The position numbers and the translations under genes were made by a program. DNA of 64,000 nt from IMG/VR virus record IMGVR_UViG_3300033182_000980, positions 186,001 through 250,000 of that record; one strand, written 5' to 3'. The notes below the pieces were generated by a model, which did no database searches, was not told the origin of the DNA, and worked only from the letters and a program-made list of their open reading frames with translations. Positions 1-12,901 of this stretch are shown one piece after another. Each line of letters begins with the position of its first letter. The stretch's first letter is position 1.

Positions 1-131
1 TTAGCGATAAGGGGTCGATCACCCCATGTACCTCTTAGTTCATCACCGTCTGTGGTAAGTACACGCCCCTCGAAAGAGGAACGCTTTAAGAAAGCACCGA
101 GAACTTTTTTATCTGAAAGGGCGATCTTCAC
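1..131 (-). CDS. Hypothetical protein, partial (runs off the left edge)
   Basis: Manual translation from GTG at 131 gives MKIALSDKKVLGAFLKRSSFEGRVLTTDG..., open to the edge, with AGGAG upstream. Not in the ORF track. Confidence 0.35.
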   Translation of the reverse strand, partial: MKIALSDKKVLGAFLKRSSFEGRVLTTDGDELRGTWGDRPLIA

Positions 132-159
132 CTTATCTCATCTCCTATTGAGTTTATGA

Positions 160-837: not shown

Positions 838-849
838 GAGTTAATCTCC

Positions 850-1569
850 TTATTGAATGAGTGAACCATCGTCTGCATAGCAAACAACGATTGGGTCTGG
901 GTTGCCGTCTGAGTCCACAGCGGTTTGAGCCTTCTTGAGCTGACCCTTACGAGCAGAGATATAGAAGGAATCATAGAACTTGTTAAACAAGCTACTCGCA
1001 TCTGCTGGGTCAGAGAACCCATTGGCTACAGGTGCCGCAAGATCAGCTTCGGTAAATGCACCTGCGGCTGTCTCCACACGAGTGTTAGCAGGCAAGGTGA
1101 AAACCTTGTAACCCGAAACGATCTGCAAGATTTCTAATACAGTTGCAAAGGAATCCCCGTTACTTAGACCAGCACCAGCATCAACACCGTTAATGATGGC
1201 ATTGATGTCTTCTGCTGTAAGGCTTTGACCACTCCGAGTACGAGCGATGATCTGTGTAGCCATGTTGCTTGCGTCAGCAACAGCAGTAGCACCACCAGCC
1301 GCTGACTCAATAGTGCCAAGAAGGTAAGCCGCTAGACCTTGATACTCTGCGTCAGTCTCAACATCGTTATTTCCACGAAGCTGTGTGGCAACATCTTCGG
1401 TCACATCACGACCATGTGCGTAGAGGTACTGTGGTCCTTGGAAGTTAGGAGTGTAAACAGCACTTGATTGAGTCTTGTGAGGGAACAGATCGGTGATCTG
1501 AACAGCAACACGATGTTGACGCTCACCAGCAACCGAGTTAAGAACTTTATTAGCGATAAGAAATGGCAT
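850..1569 (-). CDS. Putative virion structural protein, paralogue 2
   Basis: MPFLIA...ITDLFP...GPQY...GLAAYL...LQIVSG...YADDG; GGAG RBS. Confidence 0.6.
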   Translation of the reverse strand: MPFLIANKVLNSVAGERQHRVAVQITDLFPHKTQSSAVYTPNFQGPQYLYAHGRDVTEDVATQLRGNNDVETDAEYQGLAAYLLGTIESAAGGATAVADASNMATQIIARTRSGQSLTAEDINAIINGVDAGAGLSNGDSFATVLEILQIVSGYKVFTLPANTRVETAAGAFTEADLAAPVANGFSDPADASSLFNKFYDSFYISARKGQLKKAQTAVDSDGNPDPIVVCYADDGSLIQ

Positions 1570-1582
1570 GGTTTATCTCCTA

Positions 1583-2317
1583 TTATCCTGCGTAGATTGT
1601 ACCGTCATCATTGTAGACGGTAAGTAGAGGGGTAGCAGACTTAACACCTGCAAAAGCAAGGTTAGCGTTCTGAGCACCGACAAGACCTGAGAGTACACCC
1701 TCGGAGAAAGAAATCTTCCAAGAGCTATCTTGGGGAACAAGAGTTCTCATGGTTGTGCCAAGAGTACCAGGAGCGATGACAGGGGCAAAGACACCACCAG
1801 CAGTCTGAATAGCAACACCACCGTTGATGATGTAATCTTCACCTGCAAGGATAGCGAGGACTTCTACAAGTGATCCTGTAGAGTTTGAGTTTCCTGCCGC
1901 TCCATCGAGGTCAGTAGCTCCACCAGCAACTGCTGTGAGGTCAGCGTTTACATTAGCGAGAGTAACAGTCCCACCTGCTCGAACACGAGCGAGGATACGA
2001 TCAGCAACTTCTTCTGCTTGAACAACAGTAAAAGCTGGACCGTCATTACCATTACCACCTGGATCAACTTCAACATGAGCGATGAGGTAAGCAACTAGAC
2101 CATTGCATCTTTTCAAGAACTCAAGAGAACCATCTGCATTGGTCTTGATGAAAGGACGAGTCTGCCCCGATGATCCGATGTTCGGAACACGAACATAGAA
2201 CGGTCCTTGTGGGCGAGGATCAATGCCAGGGTTTGACTGAGTGGCATTGGGGAAAAGGTCAGTGATCTGAATAGATCCGTTTTGGATCTCAGACCTTCGT
2301 GCGAGAATGAAAGGCAT
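1583..2317 (-). CDS. Putative virion structural protein, paralogue 1
   Basis: MPFILA...ITDLFP...GPFY...GLVAYL...LAILAG...VYNDDG; AAGGAG RBS; class-L motif upstream. Confidence 0.6.
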   Translation of the reverse strand: MPFILARRSEIQNGSIQITDLFPNATQSNPGIDPRPQGPFYVRVPNIGSSGQTRPFIKTNADGSLEFLKRCNGLVAYLIAHVEVDPGGNGNDGPAFTVVQAEEVADRILARVRAGGTVTLANVNADLTAVAGGATDLDGAAGNSNSTGSLVEVLAILAGEDYIINGGVAIQTAGGVFAPVIAPGTLGTTMRTLVPQDSSWKISFSEGVLSGLVGAQNANLAFAGVKSATPLLTVYNDDGTIYAG

Positions 2318-2364
2318 AGTCTTTCTCCTTAATAGTTAGGGTTTCACCTATATACAGATGAAAT

Positions 2365-2379
2365 ATAAATAGACTATTA
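2365..2379 (-). promoter_or_regulatory. Class-L (putative late) promoter motif TAATAGTCTATTTAT
   Basis: Recurrent 15-nt motif; 48 nt upstream of the ATG at 2317. Confidence 0.6.
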
Positions 2380-2396
2380 AAGAGTCGGACTGCTAT

Positions 2397-3125
2397 TTAA
2401 CCTCTATTGACGACAGAACACCGAATAGTGAACAAAGGTGTTCCTGTTTGACCGGCTAAGAAGAACTCTCCGACAGCACCCGATGTTAAAGTTAATGACT
2501 CTCCTGGTCTCAAGATCGAGGGCGACATACCTGGATTAAATGAGATGAAGAGGTTAGAACCACCTTGAGGGTTATCTAGGTTTTGGATGTTGAGGGTCTG
2601 ACTAAAATTAGGGAGGTGGAAGTTAATCGCCCCTGTACTTAGCGTGTCGGGTATATCATTAGCCGCCCCTAGATTTGGTGCGTTCCCAATAGTCGTAAAG
2701 ATGGGTGCTGTAAGGGAGAAGAAATCGTAAGGTACGACACCCACTACTGGTCCAAAGTCTGTGTTCTCTTGTGTGGCACGAATTCGACCTCTGACTCTGA
2801 TATATAACATCTCGTCATCGGTCGGGATGCGAGGAGTGTTTGCCTTGAATGTGGTTGAATACTCATTAAGGTTAAACACAAATCGAGTTTGATCTCTCTG
2901 TGTCTCTTCAACGCCTAGTTTCGCCTGTGTGATAAACTTGCTTCTAAAAGTCTTATCATAAGGCACAGAGAACATCTCTACAGGGTTGTTATATGCGTCA
3001 TTGAGGTTAGATGCACCAAACACAGTAATCTGATCCATACCTCTAAGATTTGCGTTGTGTACTACCATGTCTATAAGACCTTTCGATCTATAGATAAGAC
3101 TCGGTATTAAGCGGCCTCTACTCAT
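2397..3125 (-). CDS. Hypothetical protein, possibly structural (beta-rich C-terminus)
   Basis: 242-aa ORF coupled to the upstream gene by an ATGA overlap; Gly/Asn/Thr-rich composition. Confidence 0.5.
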   Translation of the reverse strand: MSRGRLIPSLIYRSKGLIDMVVHNANLRGMDQITVFGASNLNDAYNNPVEMFSVPYDKTFRSKFITQAKLGVEETQRDQTRFVFNLNEYSTTFKANTPRIPTDDEMLYIRVRGRIRATQENTDFGPVVGVVPYDFFSLTAPIFTTIGNAPNLGAANDIPDTLSTGAINFHLPNFSQTLNIQNLDNPQGGSNLFISFNPGMSPSILRPGESLTLTSGAVGEFFLAGQTGTPLFTIRCSVVNRG

Positions 3126-3526
3126 TTCTTACTCTCTTTCTCTTTAGCAATCATTGGCTCATAGGACTCGGTACTCTTGCCCTTAGATTTGGCGAGCTTT
3201 TGAGCTTCAGCCCAAGAGTCTACACGCTCACCATCAACATTGGGAGCAAGGGTAACATTAGGGGCATCACGCTTCATCTCGGCAGTTCGTGCGTCTAGTC
3301 TCTTGTTCTTCTCACGCATCTGATTCTTGATGCGATGGTTCTTCCCCGCCCAACCGTCACCTTTGAGGATAAAGTTGGTAGTTGGTCTAAAAACCTTTTT
3401 GTTTTTAGTCTCACACTCTGGACAAGGTTGAGGTTCGTCATGTCTATCCATAGGCACACGACAGTTGTATTCTTGATCAAACTTTGTGCAGTCATTGTTT
3501 TTGCAAAGGTAGGTGTAAAAGGGCAT
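3122..3526 (-). CDS. FmdB-family zinc-ribbon protein
   Basis: MPFYTYLC...C...CPEC...F.LKG.GW pattern typical of the FmdB/Zn-ribbon_8 family. Confidence 0.8.
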   Translation of the reverse strand: MPFYTYLCKNNDCTKFDQEYNCRVPMDRHDEPQPCPECETKNKKVFRPTTNFILKGDGWAGKNHRIKNQMREKNKRLDARTAEMKRDAPNVTLAPNVDGERVDSWAEAQKLAKSKGKSTESYEPMIAKEKESKK

Positions 3527-3529
3527 GGT

Positions 3530-3904
3530 TTAAGCTCCAAAGAAATCTCTTAAGACCGCATAGGCGTGTTTGCATATTTTGTGCGTACCTTTAGGGTCTT
3601 TCTTAGTGGGTTGTTCTGCTGTACCTCTCACTTTACCGAACAAGTAATCGTTTTGGACTGCATGGTACTCTGGCCCTTGATACTGCCAATAGTTGCAAGT
3701 GCAAGTGAGGTGGAGATCGGGGTTTGATCTCTCTCCCTTAGCTTCAACTGTAACTACATAATCACCTACCTCAAACTCGATAGGCTCTTTAAGTACCTTC
3801 TCCTCAAAGCCATTTACGACAGCTTTGACAGAAGAAGCGTTGGACTTAACTTTAGAGTCGAGTCCATTTGTAATCTGATTAAGATATGCAGATGATCTAC
3901 GCAT
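3530..3904 (-). CDS. SWIM-type zinc-finger protein
   Basis: CTCNYW...ICKH fits CxC...CxH. Confidence 0.7.
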   Translation of the reverse strand: MRRSSAYLNQITNGLDSKVKSNASSVKAVVNGFEEKVLKEPIEFEVGDYVVTVEAKGERSNPDLHLTCTCNYWQYQGPEYHAVQNDYLFGKVRGTAEQPTKKDPKGTHKICKHAYAVLRDFFGA

Positions 3905-3944
3905 GATTTCTAACCTCTCTATTGTTGCTAAGAGAGGCTAGATC

Positions 3945-3959
3945 ATAAATAGACTATTA
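3945..3959 (-). promoter_or_regulatory. Class-L promoter motif overlapping the upstream stop codon, followed by an RBS-occluding hairpin (3909-3942)
   Basis: TAATAGTCTATTTAT; 12-bp stem TCTAGCCTCTCT/AGAGAGGTTAGA with one G-U pair. Confidence 0.65.
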
Positions 3960-4253
3960 CTTAACAGCGACAAACTTAACCTTATCCCCGACTCTTTCCA
4001 TCCGAAAGTTTCCAGGGAATTTGAATGTCTTACCCTTGAGATCAACGATAGCTATTTCAGAGATCGACCCATCGACAATGGCAGATCCTTCTGGAAGAAC
4101 CTCTTGCTTGAGTGAGAAATCTCCATTCATGTGCTTGAAGTTAAATTCACCCCAAACTTGGTTTTCTTGCTCTTGTGTTCGATCATCCCAACCTTCTGGC
4201 TTCGGGTTTAGGATCGCATCAACCATGTCTTTTATCTTAATATCATCGCTCAT
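3957..4253 (-). CDS. Hypothetical protein
   Basis: 98-aa ORF with AAGGA RBS; its stop is embedded in a class-L motif. Confidence 0.6.
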   Translation of the reverse strand: MSDDIKIKDMVDAILNPKPEGWDDRTQEQENQVWGEFNFKHMNGDFSLKQEVLPEGSAIVDGSISEIAIVDLKGKTFKFPGNFRMERVGDKVKFVAVK

Positions 4254-4289
4254 GTGAGTGTCCTTTCATTTGTGCTTTTGCATCATACC

Positions 4290-4333
4290 ATATAGATCAT
4301 TGTAACCCCTTAAATATAGATCATTGTAGCCCA
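4290..4333 (+). repeat. Direct repeat ATATAGATCATTGTA x2 (24-nt period) containing class-E motif GTAACCCCTTA (4302-4312)
   Basis: Exact 15-mers at 4290-4304 and 4314-4328, upstream of the ORF at 4360. Confidence 0.75.
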
Positions 4334-4359
4334 ACTCTCTCCCGAAAGGAGAACCCACC

Positions 4360-4809
4360 ATGAACATCGCAGTACCACTCAACCCCACACCCATCACCGT
4401 CCAAGAGTTTGAGGCTCTTTGCTCAAACCACGACTGGACATTCGAGTGGTCAGATGACCGCTCGGTGTGGGCAGACGGTCATCGAACACAACGGCAGATT
4501 GAGTCTCATCTCCGTACAGGGGACGAGGGCTTCAAGGCGATCTACCTCAAGTATTGTGTCCTCCCTTGGGAGGAGTCTCAAGTGGTTGAGGCTTATGGGA
4601 AGGTACGCACCATGACTGATGAGCGAGTCGGTGTTGAGGCTCGTAAGGCATGGGAGTCTCGCACTACCCTTGACCCTCTCTACGCTACCCTCCCTCGCCA
4701 CAAGCAAGGCTGGTGGTGGCTCTGTGAGCTTTCACGCTTCCTAGAGCAAGAGACAGGGGAGACGGCCTCAAAGCTCGGTACTTGGAACTACAAGCACTTG
4801 GACTCTTAG
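4360..4809 (+). CDS. Hypothetical phage protein with an HDW-x-(F/Y)-x-x-SDD domain
   Basis: Strong AAAGGAG RBS; HDWTFEWSDD...W..G pattern recalled from small phage proteins; lies opposite to its neighbours. Confidence 0.7.
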   Translation: MNIAVPLNPTPITVQEFEALCSNHDWTFEWSDDRSVWADGHRTQRQIESHLRTGDEGFKAIYLKYCVLPWEESQVVEAYGKVRTMTDERVGVEARKAWESRTTLDPLYATLPRHKQGWWWLCELSRFLEQETGETASKLGTWNYKHLDS

Positions 4810-4823
4810 GGTCGGACGAAAGG

Positions 4824-5192
4824 TTAAAAGAGGTATGCTGATTCTTCTTTAGCACCTACCGAAGTAAGTAATGCCCGACAAATATCTTGGAGCGACACCT
4901 CGAACCTCTCTATGCCCTTAAATTGATCTTCCTCTGCATACTGATTGTAGGTTTCCCAATCAACATTGTTGTGCCAATCAATGTATTCCTTAGTCAGAAT
5001 GACAATCCCCTCGCCATAATCCTTTAACTCAAACCTTCCACCCTTGGCGAGCTTCACAAACTTCTTGAGCGGGATCTCTTCAAAATCATATCCATAGTCA
5101 CTAGGTATGGTGATTTGGATCTTACTACCTTTAGCTTCTTTTTCAAGGCTTGCCACTCGCATTTCAAGCTGTTTAATCATCTCGTTAAGCAT
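4824..5192 (-). CDS. Leader-bearing hypothetical protein (start corrected to 5192)
   Basis: ATG at 5192 with TAAGGA RBS gives MLNEMIKQLEMRVASLEKEA; this removes the overlap with 5203..5916. Confidence 0.65.
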   Translation of the reverse strand: MLNEMIKQLEMRVASLEKEAKGSKIQITIPSDYGYDFEEIPLKKFVKLAKGGRFELKDYGEGIVILTKEYIDWHNNVDWETYNQYAEEDQFKGIERFEVSLQDICRALLTSVGAKEESAYLF

Positions 5193-5202
5193 GGTGTAAT
5201 CC

Positions 5203-5916
5203 TTAGAAGCGAATGTAGAGTCCTGTGCCATCTTCAAAGCGATCTTTGAGATCCTCTGCATAGACATCGTTGAACTCTTTAACAACCTTTACGCTACGAC
5301 CATGAGTACGAATGAACTCCATGTCATAAAGGTCAAGACCATTAAGGGTGATACGCACTCTGTTCACAGCACCCCTGTGCTTAGGCTTTGGGAACACGAG
5401 TGTAACACCATTAGGCTCATTGATGAGTTGCTTGAGTCCAATCATCATCTGTAGCTTACGACCACCGCCGAGCTGATTAACGATGGTAGCCGCAATCGAA
5501 TTGGCTTGTCTCTCAAGACGAGCAACCTTGACACCTCTAGCTGTGGCAGAGATACCTTTGGAAGCTAACCAGTTCATCACTGCCGTGAAATCACCTCGAT
5601 AATCATTAACTTCCATTAACTCTGCGAAGCCCATGTTTTGATTTGCTTTGGAAATCAAAGCCTTTTTAATCCCTTCTTTTCTGACCTCAACAGATTGGTC
5701 TGGCAATCTACTCTTAGACCACTCTTTCCAACTGACTGGCTTAATTGAACCATCAAATCCTACAAAAGCAAAAAATAAAGTTTCACCTCTTGAAAGGTTT
5801 ACTTTTCTCCCACTTCTTGATGCAATCGTCTTGTATTCAAATGCAGACGCTTGTCTCTCAAGACGAGCAATTCTCATCTCAAGATTTCTAATAATCTCAC
5901 TAGCTGATCTTCTCAT
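5203..5916 (-). CDS. Leader-bearing two-domain protein
   Basis: N-terminal MRRSASEIIRNLEMRIARLERQA and internal VARLERQA. The C-terminal domain (TIVNQLGG...VRITL..LDLYDMEF...VY...L...FE..TGL) resembles a recurring phage domain of unknown function. Confidence 0.75.
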   Translation of the reverse strand: MRRSASEIIRNLEMRIARLERQASAFEYKTIASRSGRKVNLSRGETLFFAFVGFDGSIKPVSWKEWSKSRLPDQSVEVRKEGIKKALISKANQNMGFAELMEVNDYRGDFTAVMNWLASKGISATARGVKVARLERQANSIAATIVNQLGGGRKLQMMIGLKQLINEPNGVTLVFPKPKHRGAVNRVRITLNGLDLYDMEFIRTHGRSVKVVKEFNDVYAEDLKDRFEDGTGLYIRF

Positions 5917-5966
5917 AGGTCATTCTCCATTGGTTAAGGGTTAAAGAGATCACCTATGGAGAACCT

Positions 5967-5981
5967 ATAAAGAGACTACAA
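5967..5981 (-). promoter_or_regulatory. Class-L promoter motif TTGTAGTCTCTTTAT with downstream anti-SD hairpin (5923-5963)
   Basis: Motif match; TTCTCCAT pairs with ATGGAGAA over the RBS of the 5916 gene. Confidence 0.6.
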
Positions 5982-5982
5982 A

Positions 5983-6981
5983 TCAATCCTCGTCATATTC
6001 CTGCTGTGCGAGGATCAACATACCCTTAGAGACAGCATGGAATGGGTCAGAGGCATGGCGTACCTCTGAAATCTCAATGGGGAAACGCTTACGCTTAGTC
6101 TCAAAGACCTCCCTAAAGAAATCCATGAAGCCACCAGCTAGGCTCGTACCCCCACCCACTACGATTGGAATGGGCTTGTTAAGGGTGAGGTGTCCACCCT
6201 TCATTACAAACTGTTGTGCGATGTTATCCAGAGCGTGTTCAATAAGAGCCTTATAATAGAACGAGATCGCTTCTTCTTCACGATTGGTAGGTGCATTAAG
6301 GTCAATGCCCTTCTCTTTAATAGCACACATCTTAGAGGCTGTTGCACCCACAGATCGAGCCGCACCTTGGTCGATCCAATCGCCACCACGAGCAACCGAG
6401 AATGAAAGACCTTCAATGGTGTTGATAGCAAGGGCGATGTTAGTCATACCCGAACCAAAGGAGATGCCGATACCACTGAAGCCTTCCTTAGCAGTCTCTG
6501 CGAATACGATAGCCATAGCTTCGTTAGCTGGATGAGCTGTATAACCACACTCTTGAACGATGCGTGTAAAGACACCCTTGTGATAGACGACATCCATGTT
6601 AGCGTCCACAGGGGCGGCAGGGATTGAGAAGTAGCAGTGTTCACCCTCATGGCTAGGCTCACCGAGTACATCTTTAACCATGTGTCCGAGAACGGTGAGT
6701 GAGTCAATCTCATCAGCAGAAATCAAACCCGCTTTGAGGGGTCTACGACCTTCTCGTCCGAACATATTGGCAACTTCCATAGCCTCATCACCAAGTACGA
6801 GAAGATTGTCATCCGCTTCAATGTATGAAACAGATCCGAGTTTGAGCATCTTCTTTGCAGACTGTGGGAGATCAATAAAGAGATCACGCATACGCCTAAG
6901 AGTGACCTCGTTCTTCTTGCCACTCATTCGGGCAGATACGAGGTTCATAGTTCCAATGTCAAGTCCTACGCCTTTACTCAT
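5983..6981 (-). CDS. Actin-like ATPase (MreB/FtsA/ParM superfamily)
   Basis: Phosphate-1 GLDIGTMN, phosphate-2 GISFGSGMTNI, adenosine loop VVGGGTS, connect-2 DPFHAVSKG; 332 aa. Confidence 0.88.
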   Translation of the reverse strand: MSKGVGLDIGTMNLVSARMSGKKNEVTLRRMRDLFIDLPQSAKKMLKLGSVSYIEADDNLLVLGDEAMEVANMFGREGRRPLKAGLISADEIDSLTVLGHMVKDVLGEPSHEGEHCYFSIPAAPVDANMDVVYHKGVFTRIVQECGYTAHPANEAMAIVFAETAKEGFSGIGISFGSGMTNIALAINTIEGLSFSVARGGDWIDQGAARSVGATASKMCAIKEKGIDLNAPTNREEEAISFYYKALIEHALDNIAQQFVMKGGHLTLNKPIPIVVGGGTSLAGGFMDFFREVFETKRKRFPIEISEVRHASDPFHAVSKGMLILAQQEYDED

Positions 6982-7625
6982 TGTTTATTTGCCTTTCTTA
7001 ATGCTTTCAAAGCAGAGAGTGCGTCCGAGAGTTCGTCTGAACCCTCTGACTTTGTTTCATTCGCCAGAGACTCGGAGGAGGCTATGGTCTTATTAGAGAT
7101 AATGTTGGAGGGGATAAAGGTCAATGCTTCATCTGTGTTCATATTACCCATAGGTTGATTGGTTTGAGCGTTATTATTCACAACCACCTGTTGAGCTGGC
7201 ATCTGTTTGGCGACTGCTTCTGCAATCGCTTCGGGAGAAATCATCGTACCGAGCTGTTGGATGAGGACAGAAGCTAGAGCATTCATATCGAGTTGAGGTT
7301 GTTCTGCTGGTTTCTCAATCACCTTTTCCACCACGACTTCTTTTTCTACTTCAACGATCTTCTCTACCAGAACAGGTTTTTCAACAACCTCTTTAACTAC
7401 CTTTGACTCCCGAACCACTTGAAATCGGTTGCTGTGTACTCCGAGTCGTGATCTATTCTGGCTATTTTTCACCTTGAGGGAGATCACTCCTGTGTTAACC
7501 AGAGACTTCAGCTCTTGGTTTGAGTCGTACTGAGCTTTCGTACAATCAAAGGTCTGACCTTGTTTGAGTTTGAGTCGGAGGCTCTTAACCTCTATGTCTT
7601 TAAGACATTGTGCTACATAAATCAT
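6978..7625 (-). CDS. Hypothetical protein with VEK/VVE low-complexity repeats, coupled to the actin-like gene
   Basis: ATGA overlap with the actin gene; VVEKPVLVEKIVEVEKEVVVEKVIEKP; amphipathic C-terminal helix. Confidence 0.65.
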   Translation of the reverse strand: MIYVAQCLKDIEVKSLRLKLKQGQTFDCTKAQYDSNQELKSLVNTGVISLKVKNSQNRSRLGVHSNRFQVVRESKVVKEVVEKPVLVEKIVEVEKEVVVEKVIEKPAEQPQLDMNALASVLIQQLGTMISPEAIAEAVAKQMPAQQVVVNNNAQTNQPMGNMNTDEALTFIPSNIISNKTIASSESLANETKSEGSDELSDALSALKALRKANKQ

Positions 7626-8194
7626 CTATTGTCTCCGCTCATCTGCTTAGTGAGAAAGAAAGTTGCTCTGCGTATGGCTTTCATTCTACCCTTCTCAATC
7701 CCTTGCTCAATAAAGTTAAACTTATAGACTGCTGGATGTATCCACTTGTTTTCAGTCCTAAGAGGGAGATTTCTAAATACAACCTCACCACTCTTGGTCT
7801 TAATCGGAACGACTTTCTTCTCCATGTTAGATTTACGAGTGAGCCAGCTCATCTCATAAGGCTCTTTGCGTTCAAGATACTTTTTAACCCATTGCCAATC
7901 AGACTTGAGCTTGATAGCTCCACCTTTAGTGATCTCGTAGTAGAACGAGTCTAAAAACTCTTTTGTGCGTGGAATACCCGTCCCCATTCCTGCCGCTTTC
8001 TTAGCCGACTCCTTAACTGCCTTGACTATTTCTTCACCGAAGATCTCCAAGACCTTTTTAGAGATGTCTTTACCCTTCAGATCAACATTCTGAAACTGAT
8101 TTTTACGCACTCTATAAGTACGAAGATCCCAAGGTCTGTTTGGATCTCTGTTCTTCGGTGGGTTTCTTCTTGCTCGTCTTGGGTCAAACTTCAT
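7622..8194 (-). CDS. Possible neck/tail-completion (HK97 gp10-like) protein (start corrected to MKFDP)
   Basis: AGGAGG RBS before the ATG at 8194; basic protein with VPIK..SG.VVFR...WIHPA...F pattern. Confidence 0.45.
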   Translation of the reverse strand: MKFDPRRARRNPPKNRDPNRPWDLRTYRVRKNQFQNVDLKGKDISKKVLEIFGEEIVKAVKESAKKAAGMGTGIPRTKEFLDSFYYEITKGGAIKLKSDWQWVKKYLERKEPYEMSWLTRKSNMEKKVVPIKTKSGEVVFRNLPLRTENKWIHPAVYKFNFIEQGIEKGRMKAIRRATFFLTKQMSGDNR

Positions 8195-8221
8195 ATCTAT
8201 GCCTCCTACTACAAGTAGCTG

Positions 8222-8255
8222 ATAAACAAAGTACAAGGGTCAATAGTCTTTTTAT
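8222..8255. promoter_or_regulatory. Divergent pair of class-L motifs (8222-8236 minus, 8241-8255 plus)
   Basis: TTGTACTTTGTTTAT on minus and CAATAGTCTTTTTAT on plus, back to back. Confidence 0.6.
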
Positions 8256-8263
8256 AACTGGTC

Positions 8264-8416
8264 GTTAGTGATTGTATCCCCTGTTCCCGATATGTGTATC
8301 TCCCATTGGGAGTCCGAAGAAGAAGGGTGACAGGACATATAGGGGGCAGAACTCCTTTGATCTGTTTGGTTTTCACCCTTTCTCAAACAGCTAGGAAACA
8401 GGACACAATCGCTTGC
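8264..8416 (+). ncRNA. Candidate structured ncRNA (rod with central bubble, 6S-RNA-like topology)
   Basis: About 20-bp closing helix 8264-8287/8394-8416, inner helix AAGGGTGA 8323-8330/TCACCCTT 8373-8380, apical stem 8341-8357; begins 9 nt after a class-L motif. Paired by eye. Confidence 0.55.
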
Positions 8417-8435
8417 TCATACAAGGACTTATCCC

Positions 8436-8723
8436 ATGTCAGATAAAGAACCAGAAATAGACCCGATAGAAATTGAGATCAACCTCTTACATGAGTTGAT
8501 CGAGGACAACATCCTCATAGTCATTCATAGGAACGGTATGTCCATTATGATGAATGAAGATGAGGAGGATAGAACCGAAGAACAGATGAGGCTATTTTCT
8601 CGCCTCTATGTAGCGGCTAACCCTAGCTTTGTCCTTCGGTTCTTTTTGATCTTAGAGGTTTTCTTGCTCTTAACTTGGGAGACTCTAGCCTATTTCTACG
8701 AAACAAAGATCAAGAAAAGGTAA
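8436..8723 (+). CDS. Small acidic protein with a C-terminal hydrophobic segment
   Basis: AAGGA RBS; FVLRFFLILEVFLLLTW is a probable TM helix. Confidence 0.6.
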   Translation: MSDKEPEIDPIEIEINLLHELIEDNILIVIHRNGMSIMMNEDEEDRTEEQMRLFSRLYVAANPSFVLRFFLILEVFLLLTWETLAYFYETKIKKR

Positions 8724-8789
8724 GAGTCTCACCTCCAAATTGTATAAGGGTAGTGTTCACATTAACCCTTAACCACATGGAGGTCGCAC

Positions 8790-9260
8790 ATGAGCGATAA
8801 GTGGAAAGCAGGACCAGAAGTCCAAGAGCAGATCAATCATCTCATCGGAAACGCACACCCTCATCTCGTAGACATTATGGATGACATCGTAGTCATCTTC
8901 AAAGAGAAGTGTTCACGCAAGGGTGGTCGCCCTATTCTCGGTAAAACCTCGAAAGCACCGGCTATCTTGTCAGTGCTTGGGGAGCATACCTACGAGTTTG
9001 TCATTGAGCTTGGAGCAGACTGTTGGAACAATCTCAATGAGGCACAGCGTCTTGCTCTCCTCGATCACCTTCTCTGCTTCATCGGTGGTGAGGAGGACGA
9101 GAAGTCGGGTGAGATGAAGTATTTCCTCTCCACTCCCGATGTCTACTATTTCTCTGAAGAGGTAGAGCGTAATGGGAGCTGGCGAGAGGACATGATGCCC
9201 GATGGTGTACCCGAAGAAGAAGAAGGCTCGGACGCACCCCTTCTTGACCCTATCGGTTAA
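8790..9260 (+). CDS. Phage metallopeptidase-like protein, catalytic motif degenerate
   Basis: GGAGG RBS; LGKTSK...YEFVIEL..DCW..L...QR.ALLDH pattern; the expected HELxH reads HLLCF. Confidence 0.6.
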   Translation: MSDKWKAGPEVQEQINHLIGNAHPHLVDIMDDIVVIFKEKCSRKGGRPILGKTSKAPAILSVLGEHTYEFVIELGADCWNNLNEAQRLALLDHLLCFIGGEEDEKSGEMKYFLSTPDVYYFSEEVERNGSWREDMMPDGVPEEEEGSDAPLLDPIG

Positions 9261-9281
9261 CAATGAGGAAGAAGCTCGTTT

Positions 9282-9608
9282 TCACATACGAGCTTCAAAT
9301 TCCCTACTGCTTTTTCTATATACTTTACCCACCGACATAGTGTCCATTGATTCGTCACTCCATGAATCAAGAGATACTTTAACGGCCTTATTTCCTTTTA
9401 AGGGTACTTCTAAGACGATCTTCCCCCCTCTTGACATTTCAAAAGGTTCAAGGTCAGTATTTACATTTTCGTTAGTTAAAATCGACACTTGATTCTTAAA
9501 AACCCTCATTAGATATGAGTCTTTGAGGTCAACTTTGCTCGCTTGACGCTCTAATCGAGCGATACGAGCTTCAAGATTTCTGATTATTTCTGACGCTGAT
9601 CTTCTCAT
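9282..9608 (-). CDS. Leader-bearing hypothetical protein
   Basis: MRRSASEIIRNLEARIARLERQA; AAGGA RBS. Confidence 0.75.
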   Translation of the reverse strand: MRRSASEIIRNLEARIARLERQASKVDLKDSYLMRVFKNQVSILTNENVNTDLEPFEMSRGGKIVLEVPLKGNKAVKVSLDSWSDESMDTMSVGKVYRKSSREFEARM

Positions 9609-9663
9609 GGTCTGTTCCTTTCATGTAAGAACGATGGTATAAAAAACACATCTAATGTTGACA

Positions 9664-9678
9664 ATAAATAAACTACAA
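9664..9678 (-). promoter_or_regulatory. Class-L promoter motif TTGTAGTTTATTTAT
   Basis: Motif match 56 nt upstream of the ATG at 9608. Confidence 0.5.
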
Positions 9679-9694
9679 ATAAAAGGAGTTTCAA

Positions 9695-10162
9695 ATGAAG
9701 TACACACGCATGGAAACTGTTGACGGACAAGAGCAGAAGCTCGTTGTCACTCTTGATGAGATCGTTCGCCTTGTAGGTGAGGATGGTGTTTATCAATACA
9801 TCACAGAAGGTGGCTGGGAAGTGTTCTCTGATGAGACATTCAACAACTATCAACAAGCTACAGCACAGACTGCCAAGTACCCACCCGACCAAGCCCTTGA
9901 GTACCTTTCACTCGGTATTGCAAGTGAAGCAGGCGAGGTTGCTGGTAAGATGAAGAAGTGGATTCGTGATGGGGATAGCAAGATGACTCGTGAGGAGTGG
10001 GTTCAAGCTATGTCATCAGAAATCGGTGATGTGCTTTGGTACGCCGCTCGCCTCGCTGATGAGCTTGGTCTAAGCCTCTCACAGATTGCAGAGGACAATA
10101 TGGATAAGCTCTTAGACCGTAAGGCGAGGGGTGTTATCGGAGGTAGTGGGGATAACCGTTAA
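9695..10162 (+). CDS. MazG-like nucleoside triphosphate pyrophosphohydrolase with an N-terminal extension
   Basis: LGIASEAGEVAGKMKKWIRD...EIGDVLWY...N.DKL..RK.RGVI.GSGDNR, the canonical MazG-like/NTP-PPase signature. Confidence 0.9.
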   Translation: MKYTRMETVDGQEQKLVVTLDEIVRLVGEDGVYQYITEGGWEVFSDETFNNYQQATAQTAKYPPDQALEYLSLGIASEAGEVAGKMKKWIRDGDSKMTREEWVQAMSSEIGDVLWYAARLADELGLSLSQIAEDNMDKLLDRKARGVIGGSGDNR

Positions 10163-10165
10163 GGT

Positions 10166-10648
10166 TTACCCAATCCACCTTGTCAGATCGCCCCAGTCTA
10201 ACCAGACTCTCTTTTTCTTAGGGTCAATTTTGATGCCGAGAGCTGAACCTATACTAGTACGATCTCGCTCATCAAAGTTGAATGGGATGCTTATGGTGTT
10301 TGGTCTACCCCCTCCACCAAACGATGGGAAACCTCTTAGTGCCATAAAGTGTTGAGCACCAGCTTGCTTAAACCATTCATCTGCACCAGTGTGAGTTTGT
10401 ACATACCCATAAACAGTCACTGTTCTGCCATTTTTTGGGTTTTCAAAAGTGACATCCACATTATTAAGGCTTTTTACTTCAACATCGACAACTTCAAATA
10501 GACCTGCATCGGTCTTGTAAAGGAGTCTCTCTAACTCTTGGAGGGTTAGTCTATTGTCCTTAAAGATGTCAAAGATACCTGCTTGCTTTTCAAGCTGTGT
10601 AACTCTTGACTCAAGGTCATGGATGATTTCTGATGCAGTTCTTTTCAT
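10166..10648 (-). CDS. Leader-bearing hypothetical protein
   Basis: MKRTASEIIHDLESRVTQLEKQA. Confidence 0.75.
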   Translation of the reverse strand: MKRTASEIIHDLESRVTQLEKQAGIFDIFKDNRLTLQELERLLYKTDAGLFEVVDVEVKSLNNVDVTFENPKNGRTVTVYGYVQTHTGADEWFKQAGAQHFMALRGFPSFGGGGRPNTISIPFNFDERDRTSIGSALGIKIDPKKKRVWLDWGDLTRWIG

Positions 10649-10691
10649 GGTAGGTTCTCCATAGGTTTGAGTTAATACCTATGGGGAGACA

Positions 10692-10706
10692 ATAAATAGG
10701 TTATTA
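10692..10706 (-). promoter_or_regulatory. Class-L motif over a stop codon, with anti-SD hairpin (10659-10684)
   Basis: TAATAACCTATTTAT; CCATAGGT/ACCTATGG 8-bp stem. Confidence 0.6.
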
Positions 10707-11372
10707 AAATCTGACCCTATACTTTTTGAGGGTCGGGGTCATACCTTTTTCAACGCTCTTAGCAATGGATACAACCTCTTCAGCTAATCTTACATTCTCT
10801 TCTGTCGAGTCGAGTCTCTTTACAAGACTGAGGCTAAGTTCGCTCCCTCCCTTAGACCAGTCATTTAGACGGTCTTGGAAATGATTTTTTAGTTCCACAT
10901 AAAGAGGATCGGGATCATACCCCGTAGCCCCTTGTGTGAATAACTCTATATTCATGGTTAGAGGAGAGTCTTCTTCTTCTCGCAAGTGTAGGAAAAACTG
11001 AGTGTCTTGCGATTGGAAGTGAAGCAGAGTTATCTCATCTTCATCAAGAATGTCATAGTATTGGTAGGGAACATCGCCAAGTTCAATCAACTCTATGACA
11101 GATTTCTCAACTTTGATGGGTGCAACTAAAGAGAATGTCCCTTGAGCTGACATCATCTTGTTATTTTGTTTGAGCTTGAAGTCAGTTATTTGAAACTGAA
11201 CTGTCCCATCAAACATATCTTGAAGCTCACCCTCTAACTCAGAGGACATTTCATCTTGAGTGAGCTTGGAAGGAACTTTGAAGTCATCAATGATGTAGTT
11301 TCTGCTCGCTTGTTTTTCAAGACGAGCGAGCCTACGCTCAAGACCTCGAATGATTTCTGATGCTTTTTTCAT
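10704..11372 (-). CDS. Leader-bearing acidic hypothetical protein
   Basis: MKKASEIIRGLERRLARLEKQA. Confidence 0.75.
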   Translation of the reverse strand: MKKASEIIRGLERRLARLEKQASRNYIIDDFKVPSKLTQDEMSSELEGELQDMFDGTVQFQITDFKLKQNNKMMSAQGTFSLVAPIKVEKSVIELIELGDVPYQYYDILDEDEITLLHFQSQDTQFFLHLREEEDSPLTMNIELFTQGATGYDPDPLYVELKNHFQDRLNDWSKGGSELSLSLVKRLDSTEENVRLAEEVVSIAKSVEKGMTPTLKKYRVRF

Positions 11373-11424
11373 ATTGGCTCTCCATTTGGTTAATACCTAT
11401 GGAGAGCCAATAAAAAAACTATTA
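11373..11424 (-). promoter_or_regulatory. Class-L motif (11410-11424) plus perfect 13-bp anti-SD hairpin abutting the ATG
   Basis: ATTGGCTCTCCAT (11399-11411 on minus) pairs with ATGGAGAGCCAAT (11373-11385), which contains the GGAG RBS. Confidence 0.75.
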
Positions 11425-11775
11425 CTCCTCAGCACCTGCCATGTCAGCAGACCCACCCTCGACTGCCATATCGGTAGTCTCCTCAACTCCACCCTCTGAC
11501 CTTGCGTCTACAGTCATGTCCTCTACACCCATGTCGGTCATGTCTGTACCCGCTTCAACAGTAGCATCCATCTCCATGCCTGCTTCTGTGGTTGAGCCAC
11601 CGTCAGTAGCTCCACCTTCAGCTCCTGCATCAGTTCCTGCATCCATACCACCCTCAGAACCACCCATCTCCATGCCTGCCATATCGCCAGCTACAGGAGT
11701 CTCGGTGGTTTCTTTATCCTTGTCGCAAGCGATAAGGGTAAGAGCAATAACTGCAATGGTAAGTAGATTTCTCAT
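11422..11775 (-). CDS. Predicted lipoprotein with acidic Gly/Met/Asp-rich low-complexity body
   Basis: Signal peptide MRNLLTIAVIALTLIAC with lipobox LIAC. Confidence 0.8.
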   Translation of the reverse strand: MRNLLTIAVIALTLIACDKDKETTETPVAGDMAGMEMGGSEGGMDAGTDAGAEGGATDGGSTTEAGMEMDATVEAGTDMTDMGVEDMTVDARSEGGVEETTDMAVEGGSADMAGAEE

Positions 11776-11777
11776 GG

Positions 11778-11830
11778 TATATACCTTTCGTTGTTAAGTG
11801 TTTGAAAGAAGGTATATAAAGAAACTACAA
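11778..11830 (-). promoter_or_regulatory. Class-L motif (11816-11830) plus 10-bp anti-SD hairpin
   Basis: TTGTAGTTTCTTTAT; TATATACCTT/AAGGTATATA stem. Confidence 0.65.
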
Positions 11831-11857
11831 AAGTTATTCAAATTTAACTGATAAAGG

Positions 11858-12790
11858 TTATAGGGGCAAGTACCGAGTTCTAGCGTATCGGGCAGACTTG
11901 CTTCCAAAACCAAACCATGACTTGAGTTTACTCACTCCAGTGTTCAAAGCGTCCATCACACCTCGACTTATACTTCTAAATCCACCTAAAAGTTTGTCTT
12001 TAAGCTCTGTAATCTTAACCCCTGTTCGCTGAATAAAGGGTAAGAAATACTTAAAGAAAAAGTTGGCAACTTTAGAGGTAGCCCACCCTAAAACTCTTAG
12101 GGCTAGATAAGCACAAAGCATGATACCCATGACTTTAACTGATCCAAGAGTAATAGCTCCCCACAAAGTCTTGGCAACAGCTCCTCCAGAAGCAAAGACA
12201 GCGATAGCGGCTGCACAAGTATAAACCACGAAAAACATTAGAATCGACCCTAGAGCGTTAAACTCATCTCCAGTATAGTATCGTTTCCCCCCCAAATTGA
12301 GGTGAGCACCCTCAATCGGAGTTCCCTTTTGCTGGAATAATTGTTCTTCGATTTGTTTATGACCCTTATAGAGCCAAGCATAAAAACCTATGGGGTCGTC
12401 CGAGTTATGTCGCTTAATACATTCATCAATGTAGGCATACTTAGCCTTGATTGAGTTTCTGCGATCAATCTCCTCTTTGATCTTTTGGATCTGAGGATTC
12501 TTATCATTGATGATCTTGTCCATGTTCTTATAGGCATTCATAATATCTCTTGGTGAGTTAATGCCAGCCTTCTTCATAGCAATCACAAAACTGCTTGGGA
12601 CATCCTCAAGTTCATTATCAAGCCCTTCTGCAAGCCCAACGAAAGCTGTTTCGATAGTAGCTTTCTCGACCTTATCTGCTTGGTTTGAAGTCTTGATGAC
12701 TCGACCAAGATTGTTGATGTAGGCTTGTTTTTCAAGGCTTGCGACTCGGATCTCAAGATCACGAATATATTGGTGTGCTGTCTTTCTCAT
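11858..12790 (-). CDS. Leader-bearing protein with a C-terminal hydrophobic hairpin (start corrected to MRKTAH)
   Basis: GGAGA RBS before the ATG at 12790; MRKTAHQYIRDLEIRVASLEKQA; two long hydrophobic Gly/Ala-rich segments. Confidence 0.7.
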   Translation of the reverse strand: MRKTAHQYIRDLEIRVASLEKQAYINNLGRVIKTSNQADKVEKATIETAFVGLAEGLDNELEDVPSSFVIAMKKAGINSPRDIMNAYKNMDKIINDKNPQIQKIKEEIDRRNSIKAKYAYIDECIKRHNSDDPIGFYAWLYKGHKQIEEQLFQQKGTPIEGAHLNLGGKRYYTGDEFNALGSILMFFVVYTCAAAIAVFASGGAVAKTLWGAITLGSVKVMGIMLCAYLALRVLGWATSKVANFFFKYFLPFIQRTGVKITELKDKLLGGFRSISRGVMDALNTGVSKLKSWFGFGSKSARYARTRYLPL

Positions 12791-12839
12791 GTTCTTTTCT
12801 CCATAGGTAGAATTAAGGTAAGGACACATATCTCAGAAT

Positions 12840-12854
12840 ATAAAGAGCCTATAA
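12840..12854 (-). promoter_or_regulatory. Class-L motif variant TTATAGGCTCTTTAT
   Basis: Motif match 50 nt upstream of 12790. Confidence 0.45.
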
Positions 12855-12901
12855 ATGTTTTAGACTCTTTATATTTCTCCTTAGCAAAAACTGAGGTGAT
12901 T

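What the first reader, a model, noticed from the sequence alone, without database searches (positions are those of the whole stretch)
5983..8236. Phage actin-like ATPase with a coupled partner in an apparently late, virion-assembly operon
Seen: all actin-fold nucleotide-binding motifs are present, though phosphate-2 has S where D is usual (GISFGSG). The gene is translationally coupled to a VEK-repeat protein and a possible neck protein, all downstream of the class-L motif at 8222-8236. Known: phage cytoskeletal proteins include tubulin PhuZ in nucleus-forming jumbo phages and actin-like AlpC of prophage CGP3. Inference: late co-expression suggests capsid or DNA trafficking or host-shape manipulation rather than plasmid-type partition, with 6978..7625 as adaptor.
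Basis: partly seen in the sequence, partly recalled or inferred. Interest (0 to 1): 0.65.

Follow-up and report, generated by a model that had tools for sequence, protein, structure and literature searches.

The report
Huge-phage actin with adaptor and neck gene
A 375-kb uncultivated aquatic phage carries a conserved three-gene cassette (tail-completion-like protein, fast-evolving adaptor, Volactin-family actin-like ATPase), which points to an undescribed actin-based cytoskeleton in huge phages that lack the known tubulin PhuZ.

Summary
ORF 5983-6981(-) is a full-length member of Pfam Volactin (PF25216, E 1.6e-75). It has all the actin-fold motifs. The Ser in phosphate-2 (GISFGSG) is a family hallmark, present in 80 of 82 representatives, not a defect. 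The predicted fold (pLDDT 87) is closest to MamK, MreB and BeeR.

The gene overlaps by ATGA with the 215-aa protein B, which in turn overlaps by ATGA with a 190-aa protein A (true start ATG 8194). Three fold searches place A with HK97 gp10 / P2 gpS tail-completion proteins, weakly.

The order A-B-actin recurs upstream and on the same strand in every related locus with enough DNA. Actin identity there is 57-97% (45% in one more phage), while B keeps only 18-42%. B's best-conserved part is its C-terminal 50 residues (F-I-P motif plus a basic amphipathic helix). A complex prediction of actin with that part scored 0.60 against 0.01 for the best control, which counts as weak support.

The motif at 8222-8236 belongs to a real promoter class, TAGTTTNTTTAT (45 copies against 1.4 expected). 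That class also precedes the sheath-like and Baseplate_J operons. DNA polymerase A sits behind a different, sigma-70-like motif.

Expression timing, polymerisation and cargo are not shown. I found no paper describing phage volactins. I rate it a new variant of a known kind.

The parts
8222..8236 (-). Promoter-like motif TTGTACTTTGTTTAT (class L; core TAGTTTNTTTAT), 39 nt upstream of the start of gene A
   Evidence: 45 exact-core copies in the genome against 1.4 in shuffles, and 79 PWM hits of which 70 lie within 150 nt upstream of a gene on the same strand. Conserved in L005 and L008.
7622..8194 (-). Gene A, 190 aa: single-copy protein with an HK97 gp10 / P2 gpS-like (tail-completion, neck) fold. 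Motif W151-x-H153-P154 is invariant.
   Evidence: Start ATG 8194 with an AGGAGG SD. No Pfam or PHROG hit. AF2 model pLDDT 75. BFVD weak hits to gp10-like / tail-component proteins. VIA best match is a SaPI1 neck chain, Z 7.6, 98 of 109 residues. ESM Atlas gives PF04883, PF05069 and PF11114 clusters, TM up to 0.73 by target. One copy in the genome.
6978..7625 (-). Gene B, 215 aa: putative filament adaptor. ATGA overlap with A at 7622-7625 and with the actin gene at 6978-6981.
   Evidence: Homologues lie upstream of the actin gene in all related loci that have upstream DNA. No family hit in Pfam, PHROGs, NCBIfam or the Atlas.
7455..7625 (-). B N-terminal globular domain (aa 1-57), the presumed cargo-binding end; fold unknown
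   Evidence: Conserved hydrophobic pattern, G46 nearly invariant. 16-47% identity to relatives.
7308..7409 (-). B VEK-rich low-complexity linker (aa ~73-106), not conserved
   Evidence: middle regions 6-31% identity.
6981..7130 (-). B C-terminal module (aa 166-215): invariant I171-P172 (F170 in 10 of 11) and a terminal amphipathic basic helix (A202, A205, L206 invariant; ...ALKALRK...). Presumed actin-docking part.
   Evidence: Best-conserved region of B, 25-59% identity (alignment). Complex prediction of actin with aa 150-215: ipSAE 0.60 against a best control of 0.01, weak support.
5983..6981 (-). Gene C, 332 aa: Volactin-family actin-like ATPase
   Evidence: PF25216 E 1.6e-75, residues 5-325 on profile positions 3-321 of 321. 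AF2 pLDDT 86.7. Foldseek: MamK 5ljv TM 0.71, BeeR 0.69, MreB 0.64-0.66. 1770 word-search homologues and 1075 clusters at 50% identity.
6943..6966 (-). Phosphate-1 motif GLDIGTMN (aa 6-13)
   Evidence: D8, G10 and T11 are invariant.
6439..6474 (-). Phosphate-2 motif GISFGSGMTN (aa 170-181), with S174 where other actins have D. This is also the intein insertion point in relatives.
   Evidence: S in 80 of 82 representatives. Inteins at profile position ~180.
6127..6162 (-). Adenosine motif VVGGGTSLAGGF (aa 274-285)
   Evidence: G277, G278, T279 and S280 are invariant.
5967..5981 (-). Next class-L motif (TTGTAGTCTCTTTAT, PWM 24.6), directly after the actin stop codon. It starts the downstream leader-peptide gene 5203-5916 and marks the 3' edge of the cassette.

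Best explanation
Genes A, B and C form one transcription unit, read from a class-L promoter. The same class precedes tail-sheath-like and baseplate genes.

C is a Volactin-family actin-like ATPase. By inference it binds ATP and polymerises into dynamic cytoplasmic filaments, as H. volcanii volactin does.

B is made in step with C through ATGA coupling. By inference it is a modular adaptor: its conserved C-terminal F-I-P motif and basic amphipathic helix dock on the actin, a variable disordered linker spans a distance, and the N-terminal ~57-aa domain holds a cargo.

The cassette always travels with A, the phage's only tail-completion-like protein. In several phages it also abuts the sheath cluster. 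I therefore take the most likely role to be spatial organisation or transport of virion assembly intermediates (tails, filled heads or packaging sites) late in infection. That would be an actin-based counterpart of the PhuZ tubulin system in huge phages that have no tubulin.

Shown: family membership, the motifs, the coupling, the synteny, the promoter class. Inferred: polymerisation, B-C binding, timing, cargo.
For: - Family and fold.
- The window is part of a complete 375,691-bp virus record that carries Baseplate_J and a sheath-like giant ORF and has no tubulin.
- ATGA overlaps, and no internal promoter or terminator above chance.
- A-B-C synteny in all related loci with upstream DNA (L002-L023, L025-L027, L030), and weakly in L032 at 45% actin identity. 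P0055's contig shows the same gene sizes and overlaps.
- Actin is 88-97% identical where B is only 31-38% identical, and B's C-terminal 50 aa are its best-conserved part.
- Complex prediction 0.60 against a best control of 0.01. 58 of 80 solved complexes and 2 of 110 mismatched pairs reach the mark, but a pass at 0.60 or under is weak. Run agreement at least 73%, partner pLDDT at least 61.
- Gene A fold. Gene A single-copy.
- In other phages the 370-aa gene that follows the actin gene is the one that precedes the sheath-like gene here.
- Class-L motif in front of the sheath-like (g194-g195) and Baseplate_J (g304-g303) operons. DNA polymerase A has a TCATATAAT-type motif and small-gene clusters have GTAACCCCTTATCTATA.
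- Volactin forms dynamic filaments in vivo: PMC10869688.
Against: - There are no expression data. No RNA run holds the region, so 'late' rests only on promoter-class association.
- Class L also precedes 20 of 24 leader-peptide genes of unknown role.
- The complex score is only weak support, and no interface was reported.
- The fold assignment for A is below the level that excludes a common arrangement (Z 7.6; Foldseek E 0.015 or weaker) and has no sequence-level support.
- B's N-terminal domain has no recognisable fold or partner.
- A conserved neighbour need not be the cargo.
- The C-terminal basic amphipathic helix could instead be a membrane- or DNA-binding element.
Confidence: 0.45

Rival explanations
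1. The cassette is an AlpAC/ParMRC-like DNA-positioning system. B binds phage DNA, and Volactin filaments push or anchor replicating genomes (or a plasmid-like carrier state) to defined cell sites. Linkage to gene A would be incidental.
For: The order adaptor then actin in one operon matches alpA-alpC of prophage CGP3 (PMC4446434). A cellular family member (P0201, 41% identity) is fused to a ParB HTH domain and sits beside a second Volactin gene. Volactin dynamics resemble ParM (PMC10869688). B ends in a strongly basic tail.
Against: There are no iterated or centromere-like repeats in or around the cassette. No DNA-binding domain is detectable in any of 11 B homologues. The promoter class is shared with tail genes rather than with replication genes. 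The A-B-C linkage has survived rearrangements of all flanks. AlpAC is an early operon.
Confidence: 0.3
2. The cassette is a host-takeover device. The phage actin reshapes or enlarges the host cell, or replaces or poisons host MreB/FtsA, to accommodate large virions. B would be a membrane anchor acting through its C-terminal amphipathic helix.
For: Volactin controls cell shape in H. volcanii, and its filament tips contact the membrane (PMC10869688). B's terminal helix is amphipathic and basic, like known membrane-targeting helices (the comparison is from general knowledge). The fold is closest to MreB and MamK.
Against: Shape takeover would be expected early, but the promoter class is the one shared with structural genes. 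Nothing links the cassette to cell-wall genes. The conserved partnership with a virion-type protein would be unexplained.
Confidence: 0.12
3. C is a non-polymerising ASKHA ATPase (chaperone- or kinase-like). B is an unrelated small protein, and the coupling reflects only compact phage gene packing.
For: The unusual Ser in phosphate-2 might alter catalysis. No polymer has been shown for any phage member.
Against: There is a full-length match to Volactin, whose founding member forms filaments (PMC10869688). The best structural matches are all filament formers, namely MamK, MreB, BeeR and actin. No Hsp70 or sugar-kinase family is hit. B co-occurs with C in all related loci and has a conserved C-terminal module.
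Confidence: 0.05

Closest known systems
Volactin (VolA, HVO_2015) of Haloferax volcanii; Pfam PF25216
   Same: Same Pfam family, full length, 255 bits against a cut-off of 35. Same actin motifs, including Ser in phosphate-2 across the family. Volactin forms dynamic cytoplasmic filaments (PMC10869688).
   Different: This copy is encoded by a huge tailed phage, not an archaeal chromosome. It is embedded in a conserved cassette with an adaptor-like and a tail-completion-like gene. It belongs to a phage clade at 57% identity or more that turned up only on short MAG contigs among 185,579 species genomes. A role in cell shape is unlikely here.
AlpC/AlpA of Corynebacterium glutamicum prophage CGP3
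   Same: A phage-encoded actin-like protein whose adaptor gene lies immediately upstream in the same operon, with the adaptor binding the filament (PMC4446434).
   Different: AlpC is not in the Volactin family. AlpA binds alpS repeats upstream of the operon, and no such repeats exist here. alpAC is an early operon that aids replication, whereas this cassette uses the promoter class of tail genes and is linked to a virion-type gene.
ParMRC (plasmid R1) type II partition
   Same: An actin-like NTPase plus a small adaptor whose C-terminal end docks on the filament (ParR logic, from general knowledge), with operon coupling.
   Different: The gene order is reversed: the adaptor comes first. There is no ParM/StbA Pfam hit, no RHH or HTH domain in B, no parC-like repeats, and the setting is a lytic-type huge phage.
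PhuZ tubulin spindle of nucleus-forming jumbo phages
   Same: A phage-encoded cytoskeletal polymer in a jumbo phage. PhuZ positions the replication compartment and delivers capsids (PMC8314001, PMC9067925), which is the functional analogy proposed here.
   Different: The protein superfamily differs (tubulin/FtsZ against actin). This genome has no tubulin. PhuZ has no dedicated coupled adaptor gene or linkage to a neck gene (general knowledge).
MamK / MreB / BeeR (solved bacterial actins)
   Same: These are the nearest solved folds: TM 0.71 (MamK 5ljv), 0.69 (BeeR 8r2n) and 0.64-0.66 (MreB).
   Different: Sequence identity is only 14-20%. There are no PDB hits by sequence, and MreB_Mbl is not reported by Pfam.

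Membership tests
Actin/ASKHA superfamily | Five conserved motifs: phosphate-1, connect-1, phosphate-2, adenosine, connect-2 | tested here: met
   GLDIGTMN, NEAMA, GISFGSGMTN and VVGGGTSLAGGF are present and conserved. Phosphate-2 has S instead of D.
Actin/ASKHA superfamily | Two-lobed actin fold | tested here: met
   AF2 model pLDDT 86.7, pTM 0.86. Foldseek probability 1.00 to MamK, MreB, BeeR and actin.
Volactin (Pfam PF25216) | Score above the curated gathering threshold over the full profile | tested here: met
   255 bits against 35; residues 5-325 on profile positions 3-321 of 321. The same result comes from the genome search.
Volactin (Pfam PF25216) | ATP-dependent dynamic filament formation | not testable with these tools
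   Shown only for H. volcanii VolA in vivo (PMC10869688).
ParMRC / AlpAC-type actin partition system | Adaptor protein that binds the actin filament | tested here: inconclusive
   Complex prediction 0.60 against a best control of 0.01, weak support. Conserved C-terminal module. ATGA coupling.
ParMRC / AlpAC-type actin partition system | Adaptor carries a DNA-binding domain (RHH or HTH) | tested here: not met
   No such Pfam, NCBIfam or PHROG hit in B or in 10 homologues. The Atlas feature search was uninformative. A novel DNA-binding fold is not excluded.
ParMRC / AlpAC-type actin partition system | Centromere-like repeat array next to the operon | tested here: not met
   No repeat family beyond chance-sized pairs in 5900-8800. 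No tandem arrays in 1-14000.
ParM/StbA, MreB_Mbl, FtsA families | Pfam family match above cut-off | tested here: not met
   Only FtsA appears, at E 0.011 and 16.5 bits against a cut-off of 31.8. No MreB_Mbl or StbA hit.
PhuZ / tubulin phage cytoskeleton | Tubulin/FtsZ-fold GTPase | tested here: not met
   No PF00091 match in the 375-kb genome, while the control rang in 13 of 14 genomes.
HK97 gp10 / P2 gpS tail-completion (neck) proteins (gene A) | Sequence-profile match (PF04883 or PF05069) | tested here: not met
   No hit in A or in 17 homologues. Genome searches did not hit gene A.
HK97 gp10 / P2 gpS tail-completion (neck) proteins (gene A) | Shared fold | tested here: inconclusive
   Three searches converge. 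BFVD gives 'HK97 gp10 family' and 'tail component' proteins at E 0.015-0.4. PDB VIA top hit is a SaPI1 neck chain, Z 7.6, well above rank 2 at 5.8. ESM Atlas clusters carry PF04883 (TM 0.73 by target), PF05069 and PF11114. All are below firm thresholds, and the model pLDDT is 75.
HK97 gp10 / P2 gpS tail-completion (neck) proteins (gene A) | Presence in the virion neck | not testable with these tools
   Needs virion proteomics or cryo-EM.

The most novel reading that the evidence does not exclude
Huge phages without tubulin run an actin-based assembly line. Volactin-type filaments, coupled through the adaptor B to the tail-completion protein A (or to particles that carry it), move or align tails and heads for joining. 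That would be the first cytoskeleton in any virus of prokaryotes dedicated to virion morphogenesis with its own adaptor, conserved across a large, globally distributed clade.
Probability: 0.2. Interest if true: 0.85.

Novelty: new variant of a known kind. Interest (0 to 1): 0.66.

Why it matters
Phage cytoskeletons are known from tubulin (PhuZ, TubZ) and from a few actin-like proteins of temperate elements (AlpC, plasmid-prophage ParM or Alp). This finding adds a different actin family, characterised only in a haloarchaeon in 2024. It is abundant in uncultivated huge phages: at least 1770 sequences at 90% clustering, on contigs of 100-470 kb. It is highly constrained, carries inteins in some relatives, and is locked into a three-gene cassette with an adaptor and a virion-type gene.

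This yields a concrete, testable system (three small proteins, a defined C-terminal docking module) for asking how very large virions are organised inside bacteria without a PhuZ spindle. It also shows that Ser-for-Asp in phosphate-2 is a functional family signature that biochemists can probe. None of the papers I could search (volactin papers, huge-phage surveys, jumbo-phage reviews) mentions it.

Tried and rejected
- PDB sequence search for the actin: no hit.
- PHROGs and NCBIfam for all three proteins: nothing useful.
- Pfam on every member of the A and B alignments: nothing.
- ESM Atlas feature searches for B, whole protein and aa 1-60: uninformative.
- Foldseek of gene A against PDB: no match at E 0.001 or better.
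- Rfam on the whole window: no hits.
- Sigma-70 promoter and terminator scan of 5000-9000: not above shuffles.
- Direct, inverted and tandem repeats as a possible centromere: none.
- Search for RNA runs to time expression: only DNA metagenomes (wetland, marine, aquatic) hold the region.
- Pfam searches of the genome for MCP (Gp23, Phage_capsid), Terminase_6N and DNA_pol_B: no hits, so capsid and terminase genes could not be used to calibrate promoter classes.
- Pfam and PHROGs on 15 large window ORFs: only Baseplate_J.
- Identity with 'Jug' gut phages (similar size, PMC12363816) was considered and dropped. The habitat is aquatic, and that paper does not discuss an actin in its text.
- B-actin fusions as Rosetta-stone evidence: the N-terminal extensions of longer family members do not match the A or B profiles.
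- Cluster look-up for names of distant relatives: no names.
- A phylogeny against MreB, FtsA, ParM and MamK was not built, because no tool-derived sequences of those families were at hand. Pfam and fold ranking were used instead.
Full report
WHERE IT IS. The window is bases 186,001-250,000 of a 375,691-bp IMG/VR virus record that CheckV rates as complete. The genome encodes Baseplate_J (window 60137-63406) and a 1619-aa sheath-like protein (weak PF04984 match). It also has a family-A DNA polymerase, a class I ribonucleotide reductase with an intein, a UvrD helicase and nine tRNAs. It has no tubulin. DNA runs that hold the region come from wetland, marine, aquatic and estuary metagenomes, and no RNA run holds it. 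Strong GGAG ribosome sites, PolA and a sigma-70-like -10 motif class point to a bacterial host, which remains unidentified.

OBSERVATION. Three minus-strand genes are packed head to tail.
- Gene A is 7622-8194, 190 aa. The mechanical ORF starts at TTG 8236, but ATG 8194 has an AGGAGG site 8 nt upstream.
- Gene B is 6978-7625, 215 aa.
- Gene C is 5983-6981, 332 aa.

The A/B and B/C junctions are ATGA overlaps. No sigma-70-like promoter or intrinsic terminator exceeds chance inside the unit. C carries phosphate-1 GLDIGTMN, the connect motif NEAMA, phosphate-2 GISFGSGMTN and the adenosine motif VVGGGTSLAGGF, and these are invariant or nearly so across 26 homologues.

WHAT C IS. Pfam places C in Volactin (PF25216) at E 1.6e-75 over the whole profile. 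The only other hit is sub-threshold FtsA. No solved structure is detectable by sequence. An AlphaFold2 model built from 26 homologues (pLDDT 86.7) is closest to MamK (TM 0.71), BeeR (0.69) and MreB (0.64-0.66), and then to eukaryotic and archaeal actins.

The Ser that replaces the usual Asp in phosphate-2 is S in 80 of 82 normal-length family representatives. It is therefore a family signature, not a lesion.

The family is large. The word search found 1770 homologues, most at 62-68% identity and many on contigs of 100-470 kb. The exhaustive search found 1075 clusters at 50% identity with E up to 1e-3, of which 338 reach E up to 1e-30. Two deposited huge phages carry it: LR745208.1 (485 kb, 62% identity) and LR756511.1 (595 kb, 32%).

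Among one genome per 185,579 prokaryote species, the close clade appears only on four short MAG contigs assigned to unrelated taxa. Three of these also carry genes A and B, so they are most simply phage contigs that were binned with cells. More distant members (about 41% identity) do occur on cellular-looking contigs. One is fused to a ParB HTH domain and lies beside a second Volactin gene, and another is fused to a Wzz/BY-kinase.

THE CASSETTE. Profiles of A and B were run against all ORFs of the fetched loci. B lies upstream on the same strand in every locus of the clade at 57% identity or more that has upstream DNA. A is there too in all but two near-identical loci, L009 and L015. The two genes are usually contiguous or overlapping with the actin gene. 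These loci range from 38% to 67% G+C. A phage whose actin is only 45% identical (L032) still has weak A-like and B-like genes upstream, with a homing endonuclease inserted between B and the actin gene.

The flanks are not conserved. In several phages a ~455-aa gene precedes A, and a ~370-aa gene followed by the sheath-like giant gene comes after the actin gene. In this genome those homologues lie at 1.9 kb and 163.8 kb. The three genes therefore stay together while their surroundings are rearranged.

GENE B. No family is detected in B or in ten homologues (Atlas). It evolves quickly: where the actin is 92-94% identical, B is 31-38% identical. Conservation is modular.
- The N-terminal ~57 residues keep a hydrophobic pattern.
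- The middle is low-complexity and variable.
- The last 50 residues are the best conserved part (25-59% identity). They hold invariant I-P (preceded by F in 10 of 11) and a terminal amphipathic basic helix (..A..AL[KR]..[RK]K..).

This layout matches filament adaptors such as ParR or AlpA. A complex prediction of C with B residues 150-215 scored 0.60 in the median of three runs, against 0.01 for the best of three controls. The runs agree in at least 73% of contacts, and the partner pLDDT is at least 61. The tool grades this as weak support: 58 of 80 solved complexes and 2 of 110 mismatched pairs reach the mark, but a pass at 0.60 or below is more often wrong than right unless the pair was already likely. 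Given the coupling, the synteny and the conserved module, I put direct B-C binding at roughly two in three.

GENE A. There is no sequence-family hit. The model (pLDDT 75) has no Foldseek match in the PDB. Three other searches nonetheless agree.
- BFVD lists 'HK97 gp10 family', 'tail component' and 'virion morphogenesis' proteins at E 0.015-0.4.
- The all-against-representatives structural search puts a chain of the SaPI1 neck first, at Z 7.6 with 98 of 109 residues aligned. The next match is at Z 5.8.
- ESM Atlas clusters carry PF04883 HK97-gp10_like (TM 0.73 by target, rmsd 2.8), PF05069 Phage_tail_S and PF11114 Minor_capsid_2.

A is single-copy, and the genome has no other gp10-like or gpS-like gene detectable by sequence.

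PROMOTER CLASSES. The motif at 8222-8236 is a copy of TAGTTTNTTTAT, often preceded by TT(T/A)(G/A). There are 45 exact-core copies against 1.4 in shuffles. There are 79 PWM hits, and 70 of them lie within 150 nt upstream of a same-strand start codon. The copy is conserved in related phages.

Class L stands in front of the sheath-like operon (g194-g195), the operon holding Baseplate_J and a 1902-aa protein, further large-protein operons, gene A, and 20 of 24 leader-peptide genes.

Two other classes exist. GTAACCCCTTATCTATA has 67 sites, 30 of them in the small-gene region at 325-375 kb. TCATATAA(T) is a -10-like motif 28-50 nt from start codons, and it is the one in front of DNA polymerase A.

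The cassette therefore belongs to the regulon of the tail genes and not to that of replication or of the small-gene clusters. That this regulon is temporally late is inference.

MECHANISM AND RIVALS. My best reading (0.45) is a filament-plus-adaptor system that acts during virion morphogenesis. Its cargo would be bound by B's N-terminal domain, and A or particles carrying A are the obvious candidate.

The main rival (0.30) is an AlpAC/ParMRC-like DNA-positioning system. In its favour are the identical adaptor-then-actin order (PMC4446434) and the ParB-HTH fusion in a cellular relative. Against it are the absence of repeats, the absence of a DNA-binding domain, and the promoter class.

Host-shape takeover (0.12) and a non-polymerising ATPase (0.05) are less likely.

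LITERATURE. Volactin is described only for H. volcanii (PMC10869688, and citing papers). Its paper mentions no virus. The huge-phage survey (PMC7162821) mentions tubulin but not actin. The jumbo-phage comparative review has no actin protein. Searches for phage-encoded actin return only AlpC and Bacillus plasmid-prophage actins. Subscription-only papers were not searchable.

VERDICT. This is a new variant of a known kind, a phage-encoded actin with an adaptor. It differs by its family (Volactin), its obligate three-gene cassette that includes a virion-type protein, its structural-gene promoter class, and its wide spread in huge phages.

Noticed in passing
window 5203-5916(-), 4824-5192(-), 9282-9608(-), 10166-10648(-), 10704-11372(-), 11858-12790(-), 22991-23746(-); 24 genes genome-wide: Twenty-four otherwise unrelated proteins share a ~22-aa N-terminal leader (MRRSASE[IV]IRNLExR[IV]ARLE[RK]QA). 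Twenty of them sit behind the class-L motif. The leader also occurs in related phages (L009, L010, L012). It looks like a targeting or propeptide signal, for example for head-internal or compartment-targeted proteins.
   Followed up: partly
window 5917-5966(-), 8753-8775(+), and 12 other 5' UTRs in the genome: There is a conserved 5'-UTR box (GTGATCTCTTTAACCCTTAACC...ATGGAGA). It folds into a hairpin that pairs with the Shine-Dalgarno region (-21 kcal/mol for the 5203-5916 gene). It is present in 14 of the 24 leader-peptide genes and has no Rfam match.
   Followed up: partly
whole genome; in the window at 4302(+), 27620(-), 28857(-), 29163(-), 29216(+), 29438(+), 35724(+): A second promoter-like class, GTAACCCCTTATCTATA, has 67 sites allowing one mismatch. 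Thirty of them lie in the small-gene region at 325-375 kb, often in divergent pairs. A third class, the -10-like TCATATAA(T), lies 28-50 nt from start codons and includes the site in front of DNA polymerase A.
   Followed up: partly
proteins P0157, P0163 and about 20 further family representatives; this genome at 3255-7340 and 86441-89101 (genome coordinates): Many Volactin-family genes carry inteins (Intein_splicing with HNH or LAGLIDADG) inserted at the phosphate-2 motif, around profile position 180. The gene in this window has none. This genome has inteins in its ribonucleotide reductase and in a 1361-aa protein.
   Followed up: partly
L031 (JGI contig of 247 kb), P0201; P0217: Some cellular-looking relatives are fusion proteins. 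P0201 joins a ParB HTH domain to Volactin and lies beside a second Volactin gene, among McsB, UVR and RND genes. P0217 joins Volactin to Wzz, GNVR and a ParA-like BY-kinase.
   Followed up: partly
L025, L026, L027 (and L024): MAG contigs labelled Actinomycetota, 'uncultured bacterium', Legionellales and Thermoplasmata carry the phage-type actin at 60-66% identity. Three of them also carry genes A and B. They are probably phage contigs that were binned into cellular MAGs.
   Followed up: partly
L006 and L007, 6478-6609: In two close relatives, a 44-aa copy of the actin C-terminus (aa 289-332, 93% identity) sits about 480 nt downstream of the intact gene, after an inserted leader-peptide gene. 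This is a partial duplication.
   Followed up: no
window 37306-63406(-): A run of giant ORFs (1089 aa with Baseplate_J, then 1902, 1084, 2060 and 1774 aa) has no other Pfam hit. They are presumably baseplate or fibre proteins.
   Followed up: no
window 3122-3526(-) and 3530-3904(-): A Zn_ribbon_8-like protein (weak hit) and a SWIM zinc-finger protein lie downstream of the cassette. A Zn_ribbon_8 gene also follows the actin region on P0055's contig.
   Followed up: no
window 8237-8435: The intergenic region upstream of gene A also holds a weaker class-L-like site on the + strand (8244, PWM 14.1). It faces the divergent genes 8436-8723 and 8790-9260, which suggests a divergent promoter region.
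   Followed up: no
L029 (LR756511.1, 595 kb): A 32%-identical Volactin-like gene, also with Ser in phosphate-2 (GISFGAG), has no A or B homologue. It has only a 76-aa upstream ORF that ends in a basic tail.
   Followed up: no
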